DNA of 64,000 bases, from IMG/VR virus record IMGVR_UViG_3300049846_000628, positions 1-64,000 of that record. One strand, given 5' to 3'. Position 1 is the first letter of the stretch. Every line of letters begins with the position of its first letter. Below, in pieces: positions 4,254 to 48,442 of this stretch. Under the pieces are notes generated by a model. The model saw only the letters and a list, made by a program, of their open reading frames with translations. It was not told where the DNA came from and made no database searches. Both the position numbers and the translations under genes were made by a program.

Positions 4254-5315
4254 TTAGAGTGCGTTGCCTCGTGGAAGAACCTCCTCTGGGAACACAAAGT
4301 TCTCATGAGGTTGATCTACTGGAGCCATCCACGCTCTAAGACCCTCATTAAGGAGGATATTCTTCGTGTAGAACGTTTCAAACTCCGGATCCTCAGCGGC
4401 ACGGATCTCTTGACTTACAAAGTCGTAAGCACGAAGATTAAGGGCAAGACCAATGATACCAATGCTGGAAGTCCAAAGACCCATAACTGGTACAAAAAGC
4501 ATAAAGAAGTGCAACCAACGCTTGTTACTAAAAGCAATACCGAAGATCTGAGACCAGAATCTGTTAGCAGTAACCATTGAGTAGGTTTCTTCTTCTTGAG
4601 TTGGTTCAAAAGCCTTGAAAGTGTTCGCCTGCTCACTATCCTCATACAGTGTGTTTTCTACGGTTGCTCCGTGAATCGCACAGAGTAGTGCTCCACCCAG
4701 TATACCAGCAACTCCCATCATATGGAAGGGGTTGAGGGTCCAGTTGTGGAAACCTTGTAGGAACAGCAGAAACCTGAAGATAGCAGCAACACCAAATGAA
4801 GGTGCAAAGAACCAACTGGACTGACCCAGTGGATACATCAGGAACACGCTGACGAATACAGCGATGGGTCCAGAGAAAGCAATAGCGTTATAAGGACGAA
4901 TACCAACCAGTCGTGAAATCTCAAACTGGCGAAGCATAAATCCAATCAGGCTGAAAGCCCCGTGGAGCGCCACAAAAGTCCAGAGTCCCCCAAGTTGGCA
5001 CCACCTGACGAAATCCCCCTGAGACTCAGGACCCCAAAGTAGAAGAAGAGAATGACCCATAGAATCTGCGGGGGTTGATACTGCGGCTGTTAGCACATTA
5101 CAACCTTCTAAAAAACTTGAAGCAATACCGTGTGTATACCACGATGTCGTAAATGTAATGCCAGTCAACCAACCACCAAGAGCAAGATAGGCACAAGGTA
5201 TAAAAAGTAATCCAGACCATCCAATAAACACAAACCTATCTCGTTTCAACCAATCATCAACTAGGTCAAATAAACCTCGTCGTTGATTTTGTAAAGAAAT
5301 TGTAGATGAAACCAT
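4254..5315 (-). CDS. psbD: Photosystem II D2 protein
   Basis: DDWLKRDRF..., C-terminal [10 protein letters not shown]; true start ATG 5315 with GGAGG RBS (ORF track starts too early at 5372). Confidence 0.98.
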
Positions 5316-5381
5316 CAAACCTCCGTAATGATTTGTAATATTTATTTTATCACTTCTTAACAAAAGGGGCAATAGAGATTT

Positions 5382-6020
5382 CTACTTACTCTTCTTTTTC
5401 ATAGGAGTATCTGGGTCAAGTCCTCTTTCTATTCTATATTGTCTCCATCTTTCCTTTGCTCTTTCACTACATTTATTTTTACCTTCTTCTGTTTTAGGTC
5501 CTTGGACTTCTGGTTTTTTTCTATTTCCTTCATCCCAAGATTTCTTACAACCTTCACTTAATTTTTTCTTATGTTCTTCTGTTTTTGGAGCATAAGAAGC
5601 ACCAGGAATAAATGTCCCTTCTTGGAACTTTCTTTTTAGAGTTTCACTTCTTTTCTTATTACTTTCTTCTGTTTGAGGAACACCAGTTTTTGTTTTCCTC
5701 ATCTTTTCAACTGCTTCTGGTTTTTTAGGTTTTCCTAAATGAAGCAATCTTAATTTTTCCTTACTTTCTTCACTCATAGGTCCTCTATTTTCTCTTCCCC
5801 TTTCTTGTCCCAACTTCATAAGAAGAGAAATAACTTCTTCTTTACCTATCATACCAGATAGACCCATCCAAGCAATTCTATCCTCCTCCTTTCCATATTG
5901 TTCCCACAATTTTTTATGTGCCTCTGCGTGTTCCTCAATAGTCATTTCAACAAGATTAGAAGGGTCATCAGTTCCTCCCATATGTCTTGGAATAATATGA
6001 TGCTTGTGAGTAAGGGTCAT
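5382..6020 (-). CDS. HNH homing endonuclease with NUMOD3-like repeats
   Basis: HKHHIIPRHMGGTDDPSNLVEMTIEEHAEAH motif; basic MSEESKEKLR/KTEEHKKKLS repeats. Confidence 0.9.
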   Translation of the reverse strand: MTLTHKHHIIPRHMGGTDDPSNLVEMTIEEHAEAHKKLWEQYGKEEDRIAWMGLSGMIGKEEVISLLMKLGQERGRENRGPMSEESKEKLRLLHLGKPKKPEAVEKMRKTKTGVPQTEESNKKRSETLKRKFQEGTFIPGASYAPKTEEHKKKLSEGCKKSWDEGNRKKPEVQGPKTEEGKNKCSERAKERWRQYRIERGLDPDTPMKKKSK

Positions 6021-6127
6021 ATCAAGTATGTTTAACTAATACTATTTATACCAGTAGGTATACTAACAGGTATAAATGTTAAGAAATGCTGATACAAAAA
6101 AGAGACCTTCACAGGTCTCCTCTTTAC

Positions 6128-7521
6128 TCATTTTCTAAAAAGTCGTTCAAGGTTTTCTTTGTTCTTGAAGAGTTCATAGGATTTGATTTGCTCTCCATAA
6201 TACTTACTGATGTGCTTACACAAATCTTCTTCTTGTTTAGTAATATCCATATTATGTTTGTCTTTCAGGATAAGGATAGTTTCAATATCTTTGAGAGAAC
6301 TAAATGGAAGGTCTAAAAATTCTTCATAAGTCATTTTGCCCTCATAGCAGTAATCACAGCATCTCTTACTGTTTTTCCTTTTAGATGGTTCATACGAGAC
6401 CCACCATTCATAAAAACCCAATCACTTTCACCATTCATTTTGAGATTGTGTGCTTGGAACTGATTGAGTAGAAATTCAAGGATTTCTGTGTCTGTTGGTT
6501 GTTCAGTCATAGTTTATTCCTATAAGTGTATGTAATTTCTCCAGTTTCCTTATTCATCAGGTATGCCCAGTCAGTTGGAATTGTATCACAACAATCCCGA
6601 AACTTTTCAGTTGAAGATACTTCCATTACAATAGGAAGATTGTTAGAGTGATGATGAAAGATTGCTACAAGTTTCATTAGGTCACCTGATTTACGAAAGT
6701 TGGAACTTCACCACAAATCTTATTTGCCTCAGTATCATTCACACCATAAGATTTCCTACATTCTATCACAATCTCATAAGATTTCAAGAACATCTCTCTG
6801 TCCTTTTGAGTATTGTAAGTGTTTAGTAGTTCCATGGAAAGGAAATAACCAGTGACGATGAGAAGTGGAATGATGAGAGTAAAGATAAAGAGTTTCATTT
6901 CATTCATAGTAGGACATATCATAACTACCTTCATTATAACCCATTTGAAAGACTTCTTGGGCAAACTTCACAAAGGCATCAAAGTTTCCAGAATACTCCC
7001 AACCATCATTCTCATCCCAATCTTCTTCAAAGTGTTCTTTTACAAGTTTGAGGACTTCTTCATCTAAAATCATTTGAGTGCCTCCAATTCAGTAGCAATA
7101 CTCAAAATTGCCTCACGAATTTCGTCATTACGACCTTCCATTCCTGCGTCGTATTCTTTGTCCCCATAAAAACACCTATAATCGTCGGGGGCAACATTAT
7201 CAGCAAGAACACGAAGGGCAGAGGCAAATCCATCACGAATTCTTCCTCCGTGAGAAAATACTTCATCAGCAGCATCTATGATTGCTTGTGCTTTGGGAGA
7301 AAGGTCAGTCATCAGGCATCCTCCAAACGAATGTACTTTTCAAATAATCCTCTCATATCATAAAAATACGATCGTGCCCTATCAAGAACAGCAGTATCAT
7401 AATCTTCTTGTGTGGGTTCCTCTTCCATTTCCATATCCTTCCAAACTTCCAAGAAATCTTCAACAGACATATGGTATTCCAGAGGAATGTATGCGATTTT
7501 GGGAATGATTGAGTTAGTCAT
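6128..7521 (-). CDS. Run of ~7 small hypothetical early-type genes (cargo between psbD copies): 6128..6334, ~6331..6510, ~6507..6675, 6677..6907, ~6900..7072, 7070..7312, 7312..7521
   Basis: Abutting ORFs with ATGA/TAATG overlaps, from ORF track and manual reading; no recognisable families. Confidence 0.6.
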
Positions 7522-7699
7522 CGGTTTGGTTGCTTATGAGAATATTATACCATCAAAAAAGGCACCTGCGAAGTGCCCTTGTTCCAGTTTAGAAAGTGTC
7601 TTTTATATTTTTACCTATTATCAGTTTGTTCTCTGTATCTCTGTAAATCTCTAAACAATCCATTCACACCAATAAAGATTAGATACAATCCCAAAAAGG

Positions 7700-7807
7700 T
7701 CATACAGAAGTCCTCACGGAATCTAAGAGGTTTTGTTTAAGCCAGTCATCAAGGACATCGAACCAACCTCTCTGTGAAATGGGCGGTGAAAGTGTTGAAG
7801 AAGTCAT
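7700..7807 (-). pseudogene. psbD: Orphan 5' fragment of psbD (24 D2 codons, then 11 unrelated codons and a stop)
   Basis: MTSSTLSPPISQRGWFDVLDDWLK|QNLLDSVRTSV*; GGAGG RBS and own promoter. Confidence 0.9.
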
Positions 7808-7827
7808 AACCTCCAATCGTATTTCTC

Positions 7828-7862
7828 ATATTTATCTTAACATTCCTTAACAAAGAAGTCAA
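7828..7862 (-). promoter_or_regulatory. Original psbD promoter (sigma70-like plus late-like)
   Basis: TTGACT-17-TAAGAT overlapping GATAAATA; GTTAAGGA-AT-GTTAAGAT direct repeat. Confidence 0.7.
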
Positions 7863-7981
7863 CCCCAATAGATGACTCCAAGAGTGAAGAAAAGGAATAT
7901 AAGAATAGTGAATACCATAAGACCTACACCTAACCAGTTTACCCAGTTAGGCATAGGTTCGTGCTGAGGATTATGAGACAT
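7859..7981 (-). CDS. Small membrane protein (40 aa, MSHNPQHEPMPNWVNWLGVGLMVFTILIFLFFTLGVIYWG)
   Basis: Manual translation; start overlaps the end of the GIY-YIG gene. Confidence 0.6.
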   Translation of the reverse strand: MSHNPQHEPMPNWVNWLGVGLMVFTILIFLFFTLGVIYWG

Positions 7982-8645
7982 TGGTTTTGTGTTTTTGTTT
8001 TCTATATTTCCAATTTTGGTTTCCTTTTTTTGCTTCGCTTAATTTTTTTCTAGTTTCTTCTGATGGTGTTTTGCCTTTATGTGCTTCACTCATTTTCTTT
8101 TTGGTTTCATCGGATAATTTTTTACCTTTCATATTCTGATTACCTTTTTGTGCTTCACCAACTTTTTGTTTAGTTTCATCAGAAAGTTTTCTACCAAGAT
8201 TCCAAGTATTTCCCATCATTCTCTGCCTTATTTTATCTTTATGTTCCTCCGTTAATTTCATTCCTTTTCTTTTTTCACTTATTTTTTGTTTTTGTTCTTC
8301 CGTCATTTTTTTACCATAGTTGGGATTTTTTTCACCAACTCTCATTTCACTTAATTTTTTTCGTGTCTCTTCATTTACCAAAACACCAGAAGCACCTTCA
8401 CCACCATTAGTTCTGTTGCGAAGAATACCAGTTCCCAAATCCTTCCTACCAAATACATCAATCATATAGATTTCGTGTTTAAATGCTTCTTCTTCAGTTA
8501 AGTTTTTCTTCAAAAATATTATTCTAGATTTATCTTTTGGTGGTCTTATATCACCATTCATTTTATTATAAATTCTTTTTCCTTTTCCCTTTCCAATATA
8601 ATAAGGAGTTTTATCCTCTCGCAAATAAGCGTAAGTGTAATACAT
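7971..8645 (-). CDS. GIY-YIG homing endonuclease with NUMOD3 repeats
   Basis: YYTYAYLREDKTPYYIGKG..., repeated SDETKKKMSEAHKG. Confidence 0.92.
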   Translation of the reverse strand: MYYTYAYLREDKTPYYIGKGKGKRIYNKMNGDIRPPKDKSRIIFLKKNLTEEEAFKHEIYMIDVFGRKDLGTGILRNRTNGGEGASGVLVNEETRKKLSEMRVGEKNPNYGKKMTEEQKQKISEKRKGMKLTEEHKDKIRQRMMGNTWNLGRKLSDETKQKVGEAQKGNQNMKGKKLSDETKKKMSEAHKGKTPSEETRKKLSEAKKGNQNWKYRKQKHKTNVS

Positions 8646-31349: not shown

Positions 31350-32864
31350 TCAGAACGTAAACTTGGTCTGAATCACACCACCAAAGTTGGAAGATGTACC
31401 AGCAAATGCCTGGTTGTTAGAGGCATAGAACACTGCAGGAGTTACAGTGATATTATCGGACACCTTATACTTGTAGAATACTTCCCACATCGTTGCATCC
31501 TTATCCAGTCCTTCAGCATTACCAGGTTGACCGATGGCGAAACCAGCGGAATTACCCTTAGCAAACACATCAGACCACTGGAGACCAGCATACCAAGTCT
31601 GAGAATCAGTAGCACCAGCAGGAGTTGCCTGACCTGCTGCATCCAGGCTTACGGTGTTCCAACCATAACCACCACTCACAGAAGGAATAATACCAGACTT
31701 AGAGGGTTGCCAATAAGCACTCAGAGAATATCCATTTGAGGTTTGACCAGCAACAAGAGCACCAGACTTACCACCAACAGCATTGAAGGTACGAACACGG
31801 GTGCCTTCAGTACCATAACGGTAACCGAATGCAATACCATAGTTAGGAGCACGATAACCAATCTGAGCAAGAGTGTTCAGAGCACCAGCTTCATTGAACT
31901 CACCCTTAGTGGAATCAGAACCACTTTGAGCAACATAGTTCACGCCAGCGACGAAACCACCTTTACCTTTTTTGGTAGGTTGTACCCATTGAGCACCAAA
32001 ACCAGAACCAGTTGCCTTGTTATAGACACCAGGAGCACCAGCAAGTTGGAAGAAGTCCAGAATCTCCGACTTATATGCAGTAGGAATCCAAGTCATCTCA
32101 GTGTTACGAACCAGAGCACCAGCAGTCAGAGTCACACCCTTAGCAAGTGCAGGGAACTGATAGTAGAGACGGTCAAGAGTAACTGCGTTTGCAGTGCTCT
32201 CTGCCTTATCCAGTTTGAATAGGGAAGAAGATGAACCGAAAGGTTGACTGGAGAAGTTACCAGAACGCAGACGAGTGCGGAGCAGGTCTTTACCAGTGAA
32301 CGAAGTATCAAGGTTCAGACGGAGATCATAGTTGAATGCAGTGTTACCAACATTCGTGCTAGCAGGATTCTTGGAAGTACCAGGAGTCCAAGCATTATCT
32401 ACGCCACCCAGAACAAAGTTTGCTTCACCACGCAGTTTGGTAGTGGTGGAGAACTGGGTTGCTTCCAGTTGACCAACTTTGGTTTCCAGACTTGCAACCT
32501 TACCTTGAATAACGGTGAGTTCGTCACGGAACTCATTAGCAAGACGCTTGAGTTCATCAGTAACTTCAGTCACACGGTCAAGGCAAGCATTCAGGAGTGC
32601 TGCTGCCTCATAGCGAGTCATTGCCTTACCACCAGCAAAAGTGCCGTTGGGGTAACCAGCAACGCAACCATAACGCTCTACAAGGTTGCTGAGTGCCTGA
32701 TATGCCCAGTCAGTAGGTTGCACATCAGAGAATTGGGTGACGCTTGTAGCCTGTTGTGCAGAATATTGATTGACTGCCGCCATATTAAGGTCTGCAGCAT
32801 TCGCGGCAACAGGAGCAACCATTCCCAGAGCAACAGGTGCGAGCATCAGTTGTTTGAGTTTCAT
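31350..32864 (-). CDS. Cyanobacterial SLH-domain porin (Som/OprB family)
   Basis: Signal peptide; FSDVQPTDWAYQAL SLH; QFSTTTKLRGE; C-terminal KFTF. Confidence 0.93.
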   Translation of the reverse strand: MKLKQLMLAPVALGMVAPVAANAADLNMAAVNQYSAQQATSVTQFSDVQPTDWAYQALSNLVERYGCVAGYPNGTFAGGKAMTRYEAAALLNACLDRVTEVTDELKRLANEFRDELTVIQGKVASLETKVGQLEATQFSTTTKLRGEANFVLGGVDNAWTPGTSKNPASTNVGNTAFNYDLRLNLDTSFTGKDLLRTRLRSGNFSSQPFGSSSSLFKLDKAESTANAVTLDRLYYQFPALAKGVTLTAGALVRNTEMTWIPTAYKSEILDFFQLAGAPGVYNKATGSGFGAQWVQPTKKGKGGFVAGVNYVAQSGSDSTKGEFNEAGALNTLAQIGYRAPNYGIAFGYRYGTEGTRVRTFNAVGGKSGALVAGQTSNGYSLSAYWQPSKSGIIPSVSGGYGWNTVSLDAAGQATPAGATDSQTWYAGLQWSDVFAKGNSAGFAIGQPGNAEGLDKDATMWEVFYKYKVSDNITVTPAVFYASNNQAFAGTSSNFGGVIQTKFTF

Positions 32865-32986
32865 AAAGTTTGTTTTTTTAGTACTAAACGACATACTGAG
32901 TTTCCGTGCAAATAGTTGCGGCACGGTCACATCAGGAGTCTATCTTAACATTTTCTTTGGGATCAGTCAAGCTTTTTGGTCTTTTA

Positions 32987-33368: not shown

Positions 33369-33478
33369 ATGATGGAGTAAGTATAATATATCTCATAAGG
33401 ATATAACAGTGACTTACTCTCTATCACTTTTATATATGGATCATCTTTCTAGGATATCTGCCTAGCGATTACTCCAAG

Positions 33479-33551
33479 CAGGCAAGGAGGGACTCGAACC
33501 CCCAATCGACATCTTAGAAGGATGCTGCATTATCCATTATGCTACTTGCCC
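33479..33551 (-). tRNA. tRNA-Arg(TCT)
   Basis: GCATC-CTTCTAA-GATGT cloverleaf. Confidence 0.95.
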
Positions 33552-33691
33552 GTAAGAGACCTCCTGGTTTGTGCATCGTTGATAGGCATAGGAGGGGCAG
33601 GTCTTATGCGGAGTTTGGACCCCCGCTGCCTATGAAAGTATTATAGGATAGAGAGGGGCTTACGTCAAGCCCCTCCAACTATTCTATTGTA

Positions 33692-33952
33692 TCAAACTTC
33701 TACCGTGATCAGTTTGGAAGCATACTCATGAGCATACGAAGTGCGAGCACCGTGATGCCCCCAACCAATCCAACTGTACGCATAGTCCATGTAACGATTG
33801 ATAGATTTACCAGGAGTCTTCATACGACTCTCAATCTCTTTCCATTGGACTTCATTCGTAAGATAACGAAGTTGCGTGTGAAGTTCTGACGGAGAACCAC
33901 CATACTTCTTAGCAAAATCACCCAATCCATAATAACGATTGGCAGATGTCCA
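33692..33952 (-). pseudogene. Orphan 3' fragment of the tail-lysozyme-like gene (86 codons, no start codon)
   Basis: WTSANRYYGLGDFAKK...KLITVEV*; 58/86 aa identical to the C-terminus of 35581..36276 by manual alignment. Confidence 0.9.
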
Positions 33953-33956
33953 TTCT

Positions 33957-34752
33957 AATTTTATTTACCAAGTTCTACTGGTAATTTGATGTCGTTTAGT
34001 TCGTCATAAAGAAGTTTAGCAAAAATAAGATGTGGTTTCTGTCTTGTTTCTATTGCTGAACTTGTAGCAACACTCCACATAATATCAAGTTGTAGTTTAT
34101 CAGGTAGTTTCTTCATCAGGTAGTTCCTTATTCAAATCAACACCATCTAAAACTTTATCTGCCCATTTTAGTGCTTCAATATTCTCAATAATAGATTTGA
34201 TTTGTTTGAGATTATCATAAAGTTGTTTATTGAAATCATAACATTCAGTCAAATGTTCTATGTTGTTGTCCTCAAAGTTAGTTTCCTCACGGATTTCCCA
34301 AGACAAACCATCCATATCTGCTGCGGTTTCTGTGATAAAGTATTCAAGTGTTTCAAGTAAAGTCATCAGTTTTCCCCATAGATACTTCTACTTCCATTTC
34401 ATTCATAATCATTTGAAGTTTTTTGACTATATTGGTTCGTGCTTCCTCTGTGGAAGAACCAGTCCAATAATCACCGTGACTTATGGAGTGTAGCACAGTA
34501 TCGGTGAGAATGTATAAATCTAATGATGTGAGTTTAGTCATCATCAGAACTCCATTTGGTGCTTACATTACTTCTTTCCCAACCTTCATCATAACCCACT
34601 TTGAAGCCTTCTGTGTAGATTAGAGCAGCAAACTTCAAGAGTTGTCGTTCCCAACACTCCCAGTAATCTGATTGTGTCCCATCATCTTTTTCACCCACGA
34701 ATGTATCAAACCCACAGGTTTTAGCAAGTTTTAGGATTTGTTCGTTAGTCAT
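33957..34752 (-). CDS. Run of small hypothetical cargo genes (34100..34366, 34353..34544, 34534..34752 and a short one near 33960-34100)
   Basis: Abutting ORFs downstream of an early promoter module. Confidence 0.6.
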
Positions 34753-34832
34753 CGGTTTGGTTGCTTATGAGAGTATTATAAGACATCAAGAGGCATCTTT
34801 AAAGTGTCTCTGTGCCAGTTCTTCAAGTGTCA

Positions 34833-35483
34833 TCAAACAACTCTACCATACCAAAAACCACTTGGAAGTTCATCAATAGAATTTATATATTTGTTTTCAT
34901 TTCCATTTGTAATCCACTTTTTACCATAACAAGGATTTTTCTCACCAAGTTTTGCCTGAATATGTTTTCTTTTTGTTTCTGGATTTTGATGAGATTTGAT
35001 TGCTGCCTGTCTATGTTTCTCAACTATTTCTGGACGATTATGTGCTAATTTTCCACTTCTACTTTTTTTATTTTTGATTTCTGGTTTATTCAAAGTTCTA
35101 ATCAAGTTTTTTCTTGCTTTCTCTTTAAGTTTTGGATTACTCATAGGATTGTATTCTGTTTTCATCAACTCACTTCTTTTCTTATTTGCTTCTTCACCAG
35201 CACCTTTATTACAATAAAATCCAGTAGAAGTTTGTTTTGCTCTATTAGCAAAGTGTGGATTTTTATCTACTTCATAAAAGTCGTGGAGAGCACATTCTGC
35301 TGCCAGGGCTTTCTCCACACTATCAAAAGTTTCTAATATTATTTTTTGAGTTGGATTGAAAGTTTTATCTTTGAAACTTCCAAAATAACTTACATCTTCT
35401 TCTGGAAGACATTTACATTCTCTTTTTCCAATATATCCCCTTCCATATTCCTCATAGGAATAATACACATAAAAGTGTTTCAT
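34833..35483 (-). CDS. GIY-YIG homing endonuclease
   Basis: FYVYYSYEEYGRGYIGKR...YFGS...ALAAE..LH..ANRA. Confidence 0.9.
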   Translation of the reverse strand: MKHFYVYYSYEEYGRGYIGKRECKCLPEEDVSYFGSFKDKTFNPTQKIILETFDSVEKALAAECALHDFYEVDKNPHFANRAKQTSTGFYCNKGAGEEANKKRSELMKTEYNPMSNPKLKEKARKNLIRTLNKPEIKNKKSRSGKLAHNRPEIVEKHRQAAIKSHQNPETKRKHIQAKLGEKNPCYGKKWITNGNENKYINSIDELPSGFWYGRVV

Positions 35484-35580
35484 ACTACTCTAACTTGCTG
35501 ACATTACTATTTATACAAGAAAGGAGTGCCGAAGCACTCCAATCTCACCTGAAAAGTGTCAGCAAGTCAGGTAAAGTTAT

Positions 35581-36276
35581 TTAGACATCAGCAAGAACCA
35601 ATCGTTTAGCATAGTCATAAGCATATTGTGTTCTTGCTCCATGGTGTCCCCATCCAATCCATTCATAGGCATAATTCATATACCTATCAATAGATTTTCC
35701 AGAAACTCTCATTCTGTTTTCAATACTCTTCCATTGTGGTTCAGTAGTAATATACCGAAGTTGAGTATCAGCAGTAGAAGGATTGCCTCCTATTTTTTTA
35801 GCAAAAGCACCCAGTCCATAATAACGAGAAGCAGAAGTAAATTGTATCAAACCATAACCTCTTCCACAATTATAGTATGAGGTTCTACTACCACCTTCGC
35901 AAATGTTAGGAATAAAAGTTGATTCCTGACGAATATTTCCCATAATGGTAGCAAGGGCGTTTCTGTCTTTAATTCCAATGTCCTGGAAATAATCCAGGGC
36001 AACATTTTCATTTTCATTACACCCTTTACAAATTAACCTTTTTTCTTTTGGCTTTGGTAATGCAACCTCTCGGATTGCTGTCTTCTTTTCATCTACAAGA
36101 TCAAACTCTTTGATAATAGCAAATGGTTTGGTTGTTGGTTCCACTGGTGGTGGAGGACCTTGCATCTTGTAGTTGACGAATGGCAGTGATGCCGTACTGG
36201 TTGTAACCGATGCCAGAAGAGGCAGGGCTACTGTAAAGAAATTTTGCACTAGTTTTAATTGAACTCTACATCCCAA
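35581..36276 (-). CDS. Phage tail-lysozyme-like cell-wall hydrolase
   Basis: ALATIMGNIRQES...GYGLIQFT; N-terminal signal-like segment. Confidence 0.75.
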   Translation of the reverse strand: MGCRVQLKLVQNFFTVALPLLASVTTSTASLPFVNYKMQGPPPPVEPTTKPFAIIKEFDLVDEKKTAIREVALPKPKEKRLICKGCNENENVALDYFQDIGIKDRNALATIMGNIRQESTFIPNICEGGSRTSYYNCGRGYGLIQFTSASRYYGLGAFAKKIGGNPSTADTQLRYITTEPQWKSIENRMRVSGKSIDRYMNYAYEWIGWGHHGARTQYAYDYAKRLVLADV

Positions 36277-36461
36277 TAGAGAAAGCGCACTTCCCCTCTC
36301 TCAAGGGGCAATCTCCTGGGCTCTAATTTCACATCAAAATCTCATGATGTAATCCCTGTAAAGGGATTTTTCATAATAAGTTTTTATTTAGGTTTTGTCA
36401 AGTAGTCCAGTTTGGAAACCGCCTTACTAAATACAAATGTATATTTACCACCACTAGAGCA

Positions 36462-42419: not shown

Positions 42420-43085
42420 TCATCCTTTCTTCCAGGCTTCACCTTCTGCCTTTCTTCTACGTGCAAGACCTGCTTCTACATTTGAACCAGGATTGCGATA
42501 GAGATATAAGGCATCGGGAACTAGATCCCACTCCTTATTCTTCAAGCGTTTAGTAATAGTATTAAAGTTATCACCACCGTAAAAACCGGCACCAAGATTA
42601 TAAGCAAAGCTGAGCAGAGCGCCTCTTTTTCCATCTGACATTTCATTCCAATGTGGGATTTTGCGAAGTGCAGGAAGGAACTGATTCTTACATTGACTGA
42701 TCAATAAATCATCTGCTTCCTGTTGAGTGATTGTATCACCAAGTTTAAATGGTGATCCATCTTTCTTTCTGGTTGATCCCCAACCGATTGTAATTGGAAG
42801 TCCACCAGTTAAAGGATCGGGATACGCTTTTAGGTGACATCCTTCAAACTCTTTAATTAACTTGATGCCCATCATAGGAACATCATCGCCACCAACTACA
42901 GGAGCTGCAGCAGCAGGTGCTGGTGCAGCATTACCCTTTTTTCCTCTATAAATCTCCGCCCAATCTACCGTATCATCAAGATACTTGACTGGGAGATTAT
43001 CTTCCAACCATTGAACTGCTTTAACGTGGTTAGGATTCTTCTCGTCATAAAACTTGAAGAAGTTGTGTAGATCAATTCTTGCCAT
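42420..43085 (-). CDS. Endolysin (GH24 lysozyme)
   Basis: IKEFEG..AYPDP...TIGWG..ALLSFAYNLG..GLARRRKAE. Confidence 0.92.
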   Translation of the reverse strand: MARIDLHNFFKFYDEKNPNHVKAVQWLEDNLPVKYLDDTVDWAEIYRGKKGNAAPAPAAAAPVVGGDDVPMMGIKLIKEFEGCHLKAYPDPLTGGLPITIGWGSTRKKDGSPFKLGDTITQQEADDLLISQCKNQFLPALRKIPHWNEMSDGKRGALLSFAYNLGAGFYGGDNFNTITKRLKNKEWDLVPDALYLYRNPGSNVEAGLARRRKAEGEAWKKG

Positions 43086-43183
43086 TTTTGTCTCCGAAAT
43101 AACGTTGATAAAGTTCGTTTGCCTCTAGATGCTTTCCGCTATTTGTAAGATCTCTAATGACCTTAAGCATCTTTCTTTTAAAA

Positions 43184-43855
43184 TTAGTCGAAGATTCTGC
43201 CCCATCCATCGTTGCCTCCTGGGCACCAACGGTGCTTAAGAACTGCTTTGGTGTAGATGGTTTTCTTACCGTTAGTCACAGGACCAGTGTAATTATCATT
43301 CAGAGAACCATATGGATCATTTACATAATATCCTTTACCATCTGGGGTCTTACCGATTACAACACACATATGCCCACCAGTAGGTGCAGAAAGAGAACCC
43401 CTGTGAAGGATACCAATAACGACAGGCTTCCCAGCATCGAGACTTTTATCAATATCAGCAAAAGAAAGATTGTAACTAAAGTGTGACTTAACTCCATAAC
43501 CAGCCAGAACTTTTGTCTGTACGGAGTGATCAGTTGTATCACCAATTGCGAATACTTTCTTAACGTATTCATCATCACCTTTGATGCTTCCTGGCTTGAG
43601 GAACGCAAGGCACATAGCGCACGATGAACTGTTGCAAGTTCTATGTGCATCTCTGTAGTTGTCTACTTGATTAAAGTATGGAACATTGAGAACTGCTGGA
43701 GTTGGTGGTTTAGTTCTGTAAATACCAATCCAGTCAGTTTCTGCATCGTCAAGAAATTGAGCAGGTAGGTTATCTTCTAACCATTGAACTGCTGCTACAT
43801 GATTTGAATTATTTTCGTCGTAAAACTTGAAAAAGTTATGAAGGTCAAGAGTCAT
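43184..43855 (-). CDS. Peptidase C39-like cell-wall protein
   Basis: VPYFNQ...CNSSSCAM...GHMCVVIG..YVNDPYG. Confidence 0.8.
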   Translation of the reverse strand: MTLDLHNFFKFYDENNSNHVAAVQWLEDNLPAQFLDDAETDWIGIYRTKPPTPAVLNVPYFNQVDNYRDAHRTCNSSSCAMCLAFLKPGSIKGDDEYVKKVFAIGDTTDHSVQTKVLAGYGVKSHFSYNLSFADIDKSLDAGKPVVIGILHRGSLSAPTGGHMCVVIGKTPDGKGYYVNDPYGSLNDNYTGPVTNGKKTIYTKAVLKHRWCPGGNDGWGRIFD

Positions 43856-47440: not shown

Positions 47441-47892
47441 TAGATTATATTACACCCTGGTTCTAATAATTTATATCTCTTTCCATCATAAGCAACTCCA
47501 GAGTAATAATTTGCAGTATTCAAAACGGAGAATATATTGTATTCTCTTCCATCACCAAATGGCGTTATATCTATCAAGTTTCCATAAGTATTCTTCCAAA
47601 TACTATGATATATTGCACACCCGTAAGTTTCATCATCAACATCTGTGATTAGGTAATAACCACTTAGTTTTTCTCCACCATAAGTGCTTACATAATGATT
47701 TACATTATTGTGACAGTTTGCATCGGAACATAATGGTTTAGATACTACGGGAACTTTTAGCAGAGTACTTGAAAATTTACAATACTCTTGAAGTTTTATT
47801 ACACAATCATCTTCTGGTAGTGATATTCTAAACTTTCTCAATACTCCATCCATTTTTTCTTGGCCCTCTTCTATCGTACTTAATTGCGGCAC
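47440..47892 (-). CDS. Hypothetical protein (150 aa)
   Basis: ORF track. Confidence 0.65.
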   Translation of the reverse strand: MPQLSTIEEGQEKMDGVLRKFRISLPEDDCVIKLQEYCKFSSTLLKVPVVSKPLCSDANCHNNVNHYVSTYGGEKLSGYYLITDVDDETYGCAIYHSIWKNTYGNLIDITPFGDGREYNIFSVLNTANYYSGVAYDGKRYKLLEPGCNII

Positions 47893-48442
47893 TCATAGTA
47901 GCATATGAAATATTTTGAGACTTACAAAACTCTTTTAATGCTCCAATAATAATATACTCTTTATTTTCTGGAGAAACAATTCTCCAAGTTTTAGAGTTTG
48001 GATTATCTTTACCAAATTTTGGTGCTTTATTTTGACTTATTTTATTTCTTGTTTCTTGTGATAATTTAACACCATATCTTGGATTGTTCTTACCAGCAAC
48101 CTTTTCACTTATTCTTTTCTTTGCTTCTTCACTATGTTTTCTTCCGCTAAATCCCTTCGTTCTCTGTCCTCCAGGTTTTCCTTCTCCACCAAGATTTTGA
48201 TTTAACAGAACTCCACCATCACACTCTCTTTTCCAAAGTGCTATATGCTTTATCTCAAGTTCTATTGCTTCTTCTTTGGATAGTCCAGATTTTACAATCC
48301 ACCTTCTTTCTCTTGGAGGCAAAATTTCAGCACCATTTTTTCGGGAATGACTGGAATTAATTCTTCTTGGTCTTCCATAACCAACATAAAAGGGAGAACT
48401 AAAGTCCTCCCTTAAGTAATAATACAGAATATAGTTATTCAT
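47828..48442 (-). CDS. GIY-YIG homing endonuclease with NUMOD3
   Basis: YILYYYLRED..PFYVGYG.PRR; RKHSEEAKKRISE. Confidence 0.9.
   Translation of the reverse strand: MNNYILYYYLREDFSSPFYVGYGRPRRINSSHSRKNGAEILPPRERRWIVKSGLSKEEAIELEIKHIALWKRECDGGVLLNQNLGGEGKPGGQRTKGFSGRKHSEEAKKRISEKVAGKNNPRYGVKLSQETRNKISQNKAPKFGKDNPNSKTWRIVSPENKEYIIIGALKEFCKSQNISYATMSAAIKYDRRGPRKNGWSIEKV

What the first reader, a model, noticed from the sequence alone, without database searches (positions are those of the whole stretch)
33692..36276. Mirror-image case: lysozyme gene with a replacement 3' end, GIY-YIG+cargo, and the old 3' half left orphaned
Seen: the full gene ends ...FTSASRYYGLGAF...RLVLADV*. About 1.6 kb downstream, after a GIY-YIG gene, a promoter module and small ORFs, a start-less 86-codon paralogue (WTSANRYYGLGDF...KLITVEV*) begins abruptly at 33952, 58/86 aa identical. 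Inference: the same insert-and-restore strategy as at psbD, but replacing the 3' end, so this is a general behaviour and not a one-off.
Basis: partly seen in the sequence, partly recalled or inferred. Interest (0 to 1): 0.82.

Follow-up and report, generated by a model that had tools for sequence, protein, structure and literature searches.

The report
Homing-endonuclease cassette with replacement lysozyme 3' end
A selfish endonuclease gene carrying a few small passenger genes has inserted into a cyanophage tail-lysozyme gene, bringing its own foreign copy of the gene's 3' end so the gene stays whole and leaving the original 3' end downstream as a dead remnant; comparison with other phages shows the cassette moving between phages.

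Summary
The full gene (35581..36276, minus strand) and a start-less 86-codon fragment (33692..33952) share 58/86 residues (E 8e-45).

Three isolated freshwater cyanophages and about 100 IMG/VR contigs carry an uninterrupted gene, which joins the window's 5' part to an orphan-type 3' end. The orphan is 91.5% identical in DNA to DSL-LC02. The 3' end now in use is only about 66% identical.

That foreign 3' end, the spacer and the endonuclease gene are 94-100% identical in at least six otherwise divergent contigs, so they travel as a unit. Five contigs share the same junction between the last cargo gene and the orphan. Their cargo ends are 97-99% identical, yet their orphans come from different resident alleles. 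This looks like site-specific homing at the Q|W codon.

Other junction types, a swapped endonuclease and chimeric deletion products also occur. Empty alleles co-occur with the filled one in the same samples. No intron and no splicing were found.

The endonuclease is a homologue of S-PM2 ORF178, not of F-CphI. Its GIY-YIG assignment rests on motifs and language-model features, not on Pfam.

The closest precedent is the fungal mitochondrial mobile endonuclease ORFs (mORFs) that carry duplicated gene C-termini. Cleavage itself is untested.

The parts
35881..36276 (-). Resident 5' part of the tail-lysozyme gene plus its upstream leader. The likely true start is the GTG at 36249.
   Evidence: 84-92% nt identity to DSL-LC02 and DSL-LC03. 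Homology with empty alleles ends at 35881 (joint). Pfam PF18013.
35581..35880 (-). Imported replacement 3' end of the lysozyme gene, in frame with the resident part, including the stop codon. It reads LIQ-F-TSAS where resident alleles read LIQ-W-TSAN.
   Evidence: Only 59-67% nt identity to LC02, LC03 and S-SRM01. It is 99.0-99.7% identical to L007-L012, whose 5' parts are 81-86% identical. All 9 endonuclease-linked allele types have F and all 56 unique endonuclease-less alleles of that set have W.
35523..35540 (-). Terminator-like hairpin just after the imported 3' end. It lies inside the 97-nt spacer that travels with the endonuclease gene.
   Evidence: The spacer is 99-100% identical in L007-L012 and 88-96% in L014, L015, L017-L019 and L083 (70% in L016). 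It is also homologous to the spacer upstream of the S-SRM01 paralogue.
35508..35515 (-). TATAAATA, the T4-type late-promoter consensus, about 25 nt upstream of the endonuclease ATG.
   Evidence: Read directly from the sequence. That it functions as a promoter is an inference from knowledge of T4-like phages.
34833..35483 (-). Free-standing homing-endonuclease gene, 216 aa. The conserved N-terminal domain is GIY-YIG-like (SegE-like). NUMOD3-type DNA-binding repeats follow, then a small C-terminal beta domain.
   Evidence: PHROG 314 'homing endonuclease', E 8.6e-13. NUMOD3 matches in 27 of 27 aligned proteins (25 members of this family plus the window's two other GIY-YIG/NUMOD3 endonucleases). 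Invariant Y5, Y7, Y8, Y17-I18-G19, E63, H67 and N80. ESM-Atlas neighbours are SegE_GIY-YIG/GIY-YIG clusters. 47% identical to S-PM2 ORF178 and 71% (N-terminal part) to S-SRM01 QPX47995. In every contig where the 78-94% identical copies have their upstream flank in view, they lie directly after a lysozyme gene.
34753..34832 (-). Repeated promoter module, with a sigma-70-like TTTAAA-17-TATAAT at 34775..34803. It recurs between small ORFs in S-SRM01-type arrays.
   Evidence: It matches four or more places in S-SRM01 locus L003 and many loci. Contigs of four runs break here (loose ends at 34744 and 34780).
34353..34752 (-). Variable cargo: small ORFs c1 (34534..34752, 72 aa) and c2 (34353..34544, 63 aa).
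   Evidence: No Pfam or PHROG family. 85-92% nt identity to the S-SRM01 small-ORF array. Other carriers of the same cassette hold different ORFs here; L008 has about 2.8 kb.
33955..34366 (-). Conserved right end of the cassette: ORFs c3 (34100..34366, 88 aa) and c4 (33961..34116, 51 aa), up to the junction.
   Evidence: 97.1-98.8% nt identity in L008, L013, L024 and L225. Identity falls within about 40 nt past the junction. The junction sequence is shared (alignment A2).
33692..33952 (-). Orphaned native 3' end of the lysozyme gene: 86 codons plus stop, with no start codon.
   Evidence: 91.5% nt identity to LC02, 86% to LC03 and 87% to S-SRM01. Up to 98% aa identity to IMG/VR empty alleles, e.g. 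L132. It begins exactly at the W codon.
33640..33675 (-). Native downstream signals left with the orphan: a G+C-rich hairpin (about 33653..33675) overlapping a sigma-70-like promoter (33640..33668) that faces the tRNA cluster.
   Evidence: tRNA-Arg lies at 33478..33551.

Best explanation
Window 33955..35880 (1,926 nt) is a mobile homing-endonuclease cassette inserted in the tail-lysozyme gene of a freshwater T4-like cyanophage.

**What the cassette holds, in gene order:**
1. a foreign, strongly diverged copy of the last ~100 codons of the lysozyme gene;
2. a 97-nt spacer with a hairpin and a late-promoter-like box;
3. a free-standing GIY-YIG-like/NUMOD3 endonuclease gene;
4. a promoter module;
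5. small cargo ORFs.

**Shown here.**
- The incoming 3' end is fused in frame to the resident 5' part, so a complete lysozyme is still encoded.
- The resident 3' end is left 1.6 kb downstream without a start codon.
- The cassette is much more similar between phages than their flanks are.
- It sits at the same nucleotide position next to orphans from different resident alleles.
- Filled and empty alleles coexist in the same samples.

**Inferred mechanism.**
- The endonuclease cuts endonuclease-less (W-type) alleles in the conserved block around GYGLIQ|WTSAN.
- The break is repaired from a co-infecting carrier. The left end recombines in the conserved middle of the gene. The right end recombines in the orphan, which starts at the break.
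- Everything in between is copied in.
- The carried 3' end (F-type, about 66% nt identity) is not cut. It acts as a built-in rescue copy.

**Inferred origin.** The founding arrangement probably arose from an ordinary intergenic endonuclease gene (lysozyme - endonuclease - next gene, as in L018). One-sided homologous repair ended in an illegitimate join at the broken end. Four different orphan start points (codons 1, 6, 11 and about 60) fit variable resection. The orphan itself is most likely a non-functional remnant that is later eroded or removed.
For: **Polarity (which end is native).**
- The orphan is 91.5% identical to LC02; the new end is 66-67%.
- S-SRM01 also has the orphan type.
- 80 of 80 LC02-like loci are endonuclease-less with an orphan-type end, mostly followed directly by the next conserved gene, F3.

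**Mobility.**
- New 3' end 99.0-99.7%, spacer 99-100% and endonuclease gene 94-97% identical in L007-L012, against 81-86% for the 5' parts. Left breakpoints vary between window ~35893 and ~35973.
- c3-c4 is 97-99% identical in L008, L013, L024 and L225, but the orphans are 83-85% or lower and of different allele types (WTSANR, WTSSDR). Downstream DNA is unrelated.
- L006 and L008 share no other detectable DNA around the locus.

**Site.**
- All orphans start at or after the W codon and none extends upstream of it.
- Two of the junctions (L052 and L017) show microhomology.
- There is an F/W split at that codon.
- The site lies in a ~70-nt conserved nucleotide block.

**Life cycle.**
- Carriers without an orphan: L018, L015, L011/L012.
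- A different GIY-YIG gene at the same spot, with an orphan remnant: L177 (and L183).
- Chimeric endonuclease-less alleles whose last 30-60 nt switch to the orphan type: L182, L189, L186.

**Population.** Contigs of DNA run X2 and RNA-library runs X4 and X16 show the empty form. It carries 37 resident-type letters in place of the 1,926 nt.

**Not an intron.** No Rfam intron is found, and the gene has its own in-frame stop.
Against: - No cleavage data exist. The cut site and the immunity of the F-type allele are inferred.
- The F/W association is confounded by shared ancestry of the endonuclease-linked 3' ends.
- The catalytic domain is not recognised by the Pfam or NCBIfam GIY-YIG models.
- The AlphaFold model (pLDDT 67.6) has no significant PDB match. 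The best is a UPF0213 protein at E = 1.
- Many carriers lack an orphan. An orphan is therefore not needed for mobility and may be incidental.
- The sequencing runs are assembled contigs. They show presence, not absence, and the RNA libraries may contain DNA.
Confidence: 0.8

Rival explanations
1. The mosaic arose by ordinary recombination between co-infecting phages. The small-ORF arrays with repeated promoter modules are known shuffling substrates. The endonuclease gene is only a passenger, and no site-specific cleavage is involved.
For: The promoter module and the cargo ORFs are widely shuffled between unrelated loci. Contigs break at the module. The cargo between the endonuclease gene and c3 differs among carriers.
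Against: Five contigs share one junction nucleotide next to orphans from different alleles. In every contig where the upstream flank of a 78-100% identical endonuclease copy is in view, the gene abuts a lysozyme gene. The sharp fall in identity at both cassette ends is the pattern of short co-conversion tracts around a break. All orphan starts cluster just after one codon.
Confidence: 0.1
2. The downstream fragment is kept because it is useful. Either it is expressed as a small protein from the internal TTG at 33925 (77 codons), or it is selected as the right-hand homology arm of the cassette.
For: The frame is open over 86 codons in all five type-A carriers. It does serve as the only right-hand homology in carriers whose downstream DNA differs. 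In L016 an upstream ATG opens a 93-codon frame through the orphan.
Against: The open frames are explained by recent insertion, since the cargo is 97-99% identical. Shortened orphans (from codon 11 in L052, from about codon 60 in L017, codons 64-86 in L177) and orphan-free carriers show that it erodes. No ribosome-binding site or start exists at the homologous position. The RNA-library contigs over the orphan belong mostly to other alleles.
Confidence: 0.06
3. The intervening 1.6 kb is an intron-like element that is spliced out, joining the 5' part to the downstream fragment in the mRNA. Alternatively the arrangement is an assembly artefact.
For: A joined form skipping 1,926 nt is seen in an RNA library (X16).
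Against: The joined form carries 37 letters that are absent from this locus and match resident empty alleles. The same ends occur in a DNA run (X2), so it is a co-occurring DNA allele. The upstream gene has its own complete in-frame 3' end and stop. No group I or II intron appears in Rfam at E <= 1. The junction is assembled independently in five metagenomes and is bridged in run X16.
Confidence: 0.01

Closest known systems
Mobile endonuclease ORFs (mORFs) of fungal mitochondria that create 'gene hybrids': Allomyces macrogynus atp6; Glomus sp. atp6, atp9, cox2 and nad3; Rhizopus atp9; Mortierella cox2 (as described in PMC3630166, which cites Paquin et al. 1994)
   Same: The anatomy is the same: gene core, foreign inserted C-terminus in frame, endonuclease ORF, then the native C-terminus left downstream. 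The native copy is much closer to relatives (91-98% there, 91.5% here) than the inserted copy (64-81% there, 66% here). LAGLIDADG or GIY-YIG enzymes are involved.
   Different: The host is a bacteriophage, not an organelle. The endonuclease is a separate gene behind a 97-nt spacer with its own signals, not fused in frame. The cassette also carries unrelated cargo ORFs between the endonuclease gene and the native end. Many independent carriers here allow the boundaries, the turnover and the empty alleles to be seen directly.
Intronless homing by free-standing phage endonucleases (T4 SegF, SegG, SegE, MobE; the concept is summarised in PMC6083498; details of the T4 cases are from my own knowledge)
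   Same: A free-standing GIY-YIG/NUMOD-type gene sits beside a conserved gene. Its distribution among relatives is patchy. The adjacent part of the neighbouring gene is co-converted, which gives mosaic genes.
   Different: In the classical cases both flanks recombine homologously and nothing is left behind. Here the replaced native segment persists as an orphan and then serves as the right-hand homology arm. In effect the element sits inside the gene at the presumed cut site.
HEG-islands (Barth et al. 2023, PMC10448857)
   Same: Accessory cargo genes travel with homing-endonuclease genes. Nuclease genes mark the boundaries of exchanged segments. The boundaries are not rigid.
   Different: Only one endonuclease gene flanks the cargo here. 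The other boundary is a fixed junction with a gene fragment. The island lies inside a coding sequence that it repairs.
S-PM2 psbA region: F-CphI (ORF177) 'collaborative homing', and the neighbouring ORF178
   Same: ORF178, next to F-CphI and just upstream of psbD, is the characterised-genome homologue of this endonuclease (47% identity over 183 aa). In both systems the carrier protects its own target gene.
   Different: F-CphI itself is an Endo VII-type enzyme (PMC6083498) and is unrelated to this protein. There protection comes from an intron in psbA; here it would come from a diverged replacement gene end. ORF178 has no reported activity.
Synthetic 'home-and-rescue' / recoded-rescue homing gene drives (my own knowledge; not checked in the paper library)
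   Same: The logic is the same: a nuclease targets a needed gene, and the drive cassette inserts there while carrying a recoded, uncuttable copy of the downstream part of that gene.
   Different: Those drives are engineered CRISPR systems in insects. This is a natural protein endonuclease in a virus, and its cutting and its rescue function are untested.

Membership tests
Free-standing homing endonuclease gene (intronless homing) | Encodes a nuclease of a recognised homing-endonuclease class (here a GIY-YIG catalytic domain) | tested here: inconclusive
   For: the motif pattern Y-V-Y-Y ... Y-I-G, with E63, H67 and N80 invariant in the 26-sequence family alignment; PHROG 314 at E 8.6e-13; ESM-Atlas top clusters SegE_GIY-YIG/GIY-YIG at 0.95. 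Against: no Pfam or NCBIfam GIY-YIG hit; Foldseek best hit a UPF0213 protein at E = 1.
Free-standing homing endonuclease gene (intronless homing) | Modular DNA-binding region of the NUMOD type | tested here: met
   NUMOD3 matches in 27 of 27 aligned proteins, best E 1.2e-27. The window protein itself scores E 0.0045, below the Pfam cut-off. A weak profile match to the I-TevI DNA-binding domain 1i3j, E 0.09.
Free-standing homing endonuclease gene (intronless homing) | Presence/absence polymorphism at one locus among otherwise syntenic relatives | tested here: met
   At least 20 contigs carry it after the lysozyme gene. About 100 contigs and three isolates lack it at the same place. Both forms occur in the same samples.
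Free-standing homing endonuclease gene (intronless homing) | Co-conversion: flanks next to the gene are far more similar between carriers than the rest, with variable tract ends | tested here: met
   99-100% against 81-86% identity, with left breakpoints spread over about 80 nt.
Free-standing homing endonuclease gene (intronless homing) | Site-specific cleavage of the endonuclease-less allele, and resistance of the carrier allele | not testable with these tools
   Only indirect evidence: the orphan starts cluster at one codon, the F/W difference and a conserved target block.
Fungal-mitochondrial-type mORF gene hybrid | Duplicated gene C-terminus: the inserted copy is in frame with the gene core and the native copy lies downstream of an endonuclease ORF | tested here: met
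Fungal-mitochondrial-type mORF gene hybrid | The native copy is closer to relatives than the inserted copy (foreign origin of the inserted end) | tested here: met
   91.5% against 66-67% nt identity to DSL-LC02. The same holds with 80 IMG/VR loci.
Fungal-mitochondrial-type mORF gene hybrid | Endonuclease ORF fused in phase with the host gene (true of some members, e.g. atp6 and nad3 in PMC3630166) | tested here: not met
   The lysozyme ends at a TAA at 35581-35583. A 97-nt spacer with a hairpin precedes the endonuclease ATG at 35483.
Group I/II intron or intein with homing endonuclease | A self-splicing RNA or protein element surrounds the endonuclease, and the flanking exons are joined after splicing | tested here: not met
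   No intron family in Rfam at E <= 1. The upstream reading frame is complete. The only joined forms are DNA-encoded empty alleles with 37 extra letters.
HEG-island (Barth et al. 2023) | Cargo genes bracketed by homing-endonuclease genes | tested here: not met
   There is one endonuclease gene only, at the left. The right boundary is the c4|orphan junction.
Integrase-mediated island that restores the 3' end of its target gene | A tyrosine or serine recombinase, with attL/attR repeats flanking the insert | tested here: not met
   None of the five cassette ORFs matches a recombinase in Pfam or PHROGs. The two gene-end copies are 66% identical homeologues, not att repeats.

The most novel reading that the evidence does not exclude
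This may be a natural 'home-and-rescue' gene drive in a virus. The endonuclease would cut a conserved virion-lysozyme gene exactly where its own cassette sits. The cassette would carry a recoded, uncuttable replacement for the part of the gene it displaces, so it can live inside a coding sequence without an intron or intein. The displaced native end would double as the homology arm that lets arbitrary cargo genes ride along. If this is general (the psbD locus in the same window shows the mirror image), it is a third route, besides introns and inteins, by which selfish nucleases colonise essential phage genes and ferry accessory genes between phages.
Probability: 0.45. Interest if true: 0.72.

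Novelty: new variant of a known kind. Interest (0 to 1): 0.62.

Why it matters
Free-standing homing endonucleases are known to make phage genes mosaic. Usually the only trace they leave is a patch of foreign sequence.

Here the replaced native segment survives. The donor and recipient parts, the insertion point and the direction of the event can therefore be read directly from one genome. More than 100 related contigs then show the whole life cycle: empty sites, invasion, cargo turnover, replacement of the endonuclease, erosion of the orphan, and deletion to chimeric resistant alleles.

It extends an arrangement so far described for fungal mitochondria to bacteriophages. It gives a concrete, testable target site for an uncharacterised endonuclease family that includes S-PM2 ORF178. 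It also shows how small accessory ORFs can be carried into a conserved structural gene without destroying it.

For annotation, it warns that start-less gene fragments next to nuclease genes in phage genomes are footprints of such events, not sequencing errors.

Tried and rejected
- **F-CphI.** The tblastn hit in S-PM2 listed F-CphI. The annotation table shows the match lies in the neighbouring ORF178, and PMC6083498 shows F-CphI is an Endo VII-type enzyme. The F-CphI link was dropped.
- **HMM searches for a GIY-YIG domain.** Pfam and NCBIfam found none.
- **Structure.** Foldseek against the PDB was not significant. A sequence profile against the PDB gave only a weak match to the I-TevI DNA-binding domain.
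- **Donor of the founding junction.** I looked for the donor by searching for c3/c4 elsewhere. The first part of c3 is widespread in small-ORF arrays. c4 and the junction occur only in the five type-A carriers. The sequence that originally followed c4, and so the microhomology used, could not be recovered.
- **F/W association scan.** It is perfect in the first set, but it is not independent of phylogeny, and later loci include F-type alleles without this endonuclease. I use it only as supporting evidence.
- **Literature.** Three full-text searches found no phage case with a retained orphan. That is absence in an incomplete library, not proof. Belle et al. 2002 (the SegF paper) is not held.
- **Rejected readings.** Tandem duplication with divergence was rejected on the 91.5% vs 66% asymmetry. 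Intron splicing and assembly artefact were also rejected (see the rival explanations).
Full report
**1. The observation**

- The window is part of IMG/VR contig IMGVR_UViG_3300049846_000628. This is a 211-kb freshwater T4-like cyanophage (family Kyanoviridae by its nearest isolates).
- On the minus strand, 35581..36276 is a 231-codon ORF. It matches Pfam PF18013, phage tail lysozyme, at E 4e-14, and PHROG 512. By homology its real start is probably the GTG at 36249.
- 1,629 nt further on, 33692..33952 is an 86-codon open frame that begins right after the TAA of the preceding small ORF and has no start of its own.
- The two share 58/86 residues without gaps, E 8e-45.
- Between them lie:
  - a 216-aa endonuclease ORF (34833..35483);
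  - a sigma-70-like promoter module (34775..34803);
  - four small ORFs with no family match.

The description is accurate.

**2. Which copy is native**

- Megablast against isolated phages found DSL-LC02 and DSL-LC03. In both, the two ends of my 3-kb query map onto one uninterrupted ~700-bp gene.
- Identity to LC02:

| Segment of the window | nt identity to LC02 |
|---|---|
| Upstream leader and start of the gene | 92% |
| Middle of the gene | 84% |
| 3' end now in use | 59-67% |
| Orphan | 91.5% |

- S-SRM01 likewise carries the orphan type, at 87%.
- Of 80 IMG/VR loci fetched with the LC02 protein, all 80 are endonuclease-less, with an orphan-type 3' end 79-98% identical in protein to the window's orphan. 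Most are followed within 45-90 nt by a conserved 135-aa gene (F3) and then tRNA genes.
- The orphan is therefore the original end of this phage's gene. The end in use is imported.

**3. The imported piece is a mobile unit**

- A search with the endonuclease protein returned 80 loci. In every locus where a copy 78-100% identical in protein has its upstream flank in view, the gene lies directly downstream of a lysozyme gene.
- Against the window, loci L007-L012 (from different metagenomes) compare as follows:

| Segment | nt identity to the window |
|---|---|
| New 3' end | 99.0-99.7% |
| 97-nt spacer | 99-100% |
| Endonuclease gene | 94-97% |
| 5' part of the lysozyme gene | 81-86% |

- The switch falls at different points between window ~35973 and ~35893 in different loci.
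- In more distant carriers (L014, L018, L019, L083) only the spacer and the endonuclease gene are highly similar, starting right at the lysozyme stop codon. The same spacer plus N-terminal domain occurs beside gene 32 in S-SRM01.
- The core element is thus spacer + endonuclease gene. In this lineage it drags about 300 nt of lysozyme sequence with it.

**4. The right-hand end**

- Five contigs (the window, L008, L013, L024, L225) share the junction sequence ...GGTAAATAAAATT(A/G)G|AATGGAC... (alignment A2).
- c3-c4 is 97.1-98.8% identical among them.
- Identity drops within about 40 nt after the junction:
  - the orphans of L008, L013 and L024 are 83-85% identical to the window's;
  - they belong to different resident allele types (WTSANR in the window and L013, WTSSDR in L225);
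  - the DNA beyond them is unrelated.
- Around the locus, L006 and L008 share nothing else detectable by blastn.
- The cargo between the endonuclease gene and c3 differs: two ORFs here, about eleven in L008.
- The picture is of a cassette with conserved ends and a variable middle, sitting at one nucleotide position in different resident genes. That is what homing into a specific site produces.

**5. Other states of the locus**

Gene maps, junction reads and a further search with the new 3' end show these states:

- L018: lysozyme - endonuclease - F3, with no orphan.
- L015, L011/L012: as L018, with one extra gene.
- L016: the orphan is joined directly to the end of the endonuclease gene, from codon 6.
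- L052: the orphan starts at codon 11, after another gene, with a TTGG/GTGA microhomology at the join.
- L017: the orphan starts at about codon 60.
- L177/L178 and L183: a different GIY-YIG gene sits in the same spot. It is a homologue of the window's 7971..8645. L177 keeps orphan codons 64-86.
- L182, L189, L186: endonuclease-less genes whose 3' end is new-type for the first ~180 nt and orphan-type (30/30 nt) at the very end. This is expected from recombination between the two homeologous copies, or from patch conversion.

No orphan extends upstream of the W codon. No W-type full gene has the endonuclease gene behind it.

**6. Sequencing runs**

- The sequence is held nearly complete (share of sampled words 0.94-0.98) by the probable source sample (X1) and by a second freshwater sample (X2/X3), and in part (0.27-0.78) by several RNA libraries.
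- I laid the assembled contigs of X2 and X6 (DNA) and of X4 and X16 (RNA libraries) on 33400-36400.
- X16 has two contigs that skip 33954 to 35881 (1,926 nt) but carry 37 other letters there.
- Those letters are the reverse complement of the resident-type AGTTGG..GGTTACGGACTGATTC block seen in LC02.
- X2 (DNA) and X4 have loose ends of the same kind at both positions.
- These are therefore co-occurring empty alleles, not spliced RNA.
- They fix the cassette limits at 33955..35880. They also show that 37 nt of resident sequence upstream of the W codon were replaced.
- X16 also has a contig that bridges the c4|orphan junction.
- In X4 the hybrid lysozyme has far higher contig depth (219-550) than the endonuclease gene (2-7). 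This is only suggestive: these are contigs, and DNA may be present in the library.
- Rfam finds no intron in the region.

**7. The endonuclease**

- The family has a highly conserved ~90-residue N-terminal domain. Y5, Y7, Y8, Y17-I18-G19, E63, H67 and N80 are invariant in the 26-sequence family alignment. It is followed by variable NUMOD3 repeats, which match in all 27 aligned proteins.
- PHROG 314 'homing endonuclease' matches at E 8.6e-13.
- ESM-Atlas neighbours of residues 1-95 are SegE_GIY-YIG/GIY-YIG phage clusters.
- Pfam and NCBIfam GIY-YIG models do not match, and the predicted structure gives no significant PDB hit.
- I therefore call it GIY-YIG-like, probable but not proven.
- Its homologue in S-PM2 is ORF178, next to F-CphI. 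It is not F-CphI itself, which is an Endo VII-type enzyme (PMC6083498).

**8. Mechanism**

*Shown:*
- the polarity of the event;
- the mobility of the cassette;
- the fixed insertion point;
- coexistence of filled and empty alleles;
- the derivative forms.

*Inferred:*
- The enzyme cuts W-type alleles in the conserved ~70-nt block around GYGLIQ|WTSAN.
- The broken ends are repaired from a carrier. The left end crosses over 0-80 nt upstream of the diverged segment. The right end crosses over in the orphan, which begins at the break.
- The F-type copy escapes cutting and keeps the gene functional.
- The first orphan probably arose when a canonical intergenic element (as in L018) homed into a genome without matching downstream DNA, and the right end was joined illegitimately. 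The four orphan start points (codons 1, 6, 11 and about 60) fit variable resection from one cut.

**9. Comparison with what is known**

- The anatomy matches the mobile endonuclease ORFs of fungal mitochondria, which carry a foreign gene C-terminus and leave the native one downstream: Allomyces atp6, and Glomus atp6, atp9, cox2 and nad3. The identity asymmetry there is similar (PMC3630166).
- The process matches intronless homing with co-conversion, known for T4 Seg and Mob enzymes (concept in PMC6083498; T4 details from my own knowledge).
- The cargo recalls HEG-islands (PMC10448857).
- I found no phage case with a retained orphan in three full-text searches. The library is incomplete, so this is not proof of absence.
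- I rate it a new variant of a known kind: the mitochondrial arrangement, in a virus, with cargo and a well-resolved life cycle.

**10. Generality**

In the same window a psbD 5' fragment (about 7730-7862) lies beside another GIY-YIG/NUMOD3 gene (7971..8645). It is 2.4 kb upstream of an HNH gene (5382..6020) and an intact psbD (4254..5372). The fragment is collinear with the 5' end of psbD in S-PM2 and DSL-LC02. I did not analyse it further.

Noticed in passing
window 4254-8645 (minus strand): The mirror case at psbD. An intact psbD (4254..5372) is preceded by an HNH endonuclease gene (5382..6020), small ORFs, and a degraded psbD 5' fragment (about 7730-7862, 52-56% aa identity, with a frame shift). 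The fragment lies next to a GIY-YIG/NUMOD3 gene (7971..8645). It maps collinearly onto the 5' end of psbD in S-PM2 and DSL-LC02.
   Followed up: partly
window 33559-33595 (minus strand): An Rfam abiF RNA motif (RF03085) scores 44.2 bits, above its gathering score of 37 (E 3.8e-6). It is a 37-nt hairpin between the orphan and tRNA-Arg. An RNA motif associated with abortive-infection genes inside a phage tRNA cluster could be a decoy, or it could be a chance hairpin.
   Followed up: no
L177:3429-4007, L183:1496-2071; window 7971-8645: Endonuclease swapping. In some contigs the slot behind the new-type lysozyme 3' end holds a different GIY-YIG gene (191-192 aa). That gene is a homologue of the one beside the psbD fragment in this window. 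It keeps a related upstream spacer, and L177 keeps an orphan remnant.
   Followed up: partly
window 42420-43855 (minus strand): Two adjacent genes (43184..43855 and 42420..43085) share an N-terminal ~50 residues at 65-72% identity but have different C-terminal domains. One looks like a T4-lysozyme-type muramidase. This may be a modular pair of lysins.
   Followed up: no
window 35034-35113 (L006 4371-4450): Inside the otherwise 98-100% identical endonuclease genes of L007-L012 there is an ~80-nt patch of only 78-90% identity. It falls in the NUMOD/DNA-binding region. This may be a swapped recognition module.
   Followed up: no
window 34741-34831; L003 (S-SRM01), several places: The promoter module between the endonuclease gene and c1 recurs many times between small ORFs in S-SRM01 and in dozens of IMG/VR loci. 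Assembled contigs of four runs end there. It behaves like the shuffling cassettes described for T4-type phages.
   Followed up: partly
window 31350-32930 (minus strand): A 526-aa porin-like ORF with an N-terminal SLH-type region lies just beyond the tRNA cluster. S-SRM01 has an annotated porin in the same neighbourhood downstream of its lysozyme gene. G+C here is 0.46-0.51, against 0.30-0.39 in the cassette.
   Followed up: no
window 47828-48442 (minus strand): A third GIY-YIG/NUMOD3-type gene in the window, 38% identical to 7971..8645. The window therefore holds at least four putative homing-endonuclease genes.
   Followed up: no
S-RIM8, S-RIM50, S-H25, S-T4 records: In several marine cyanophages the single tblastn match to this lysozyme lies under two annotated genes (for example gp214 | gp215). 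The gene may be split or mis-annotated there.
   Followed up: no
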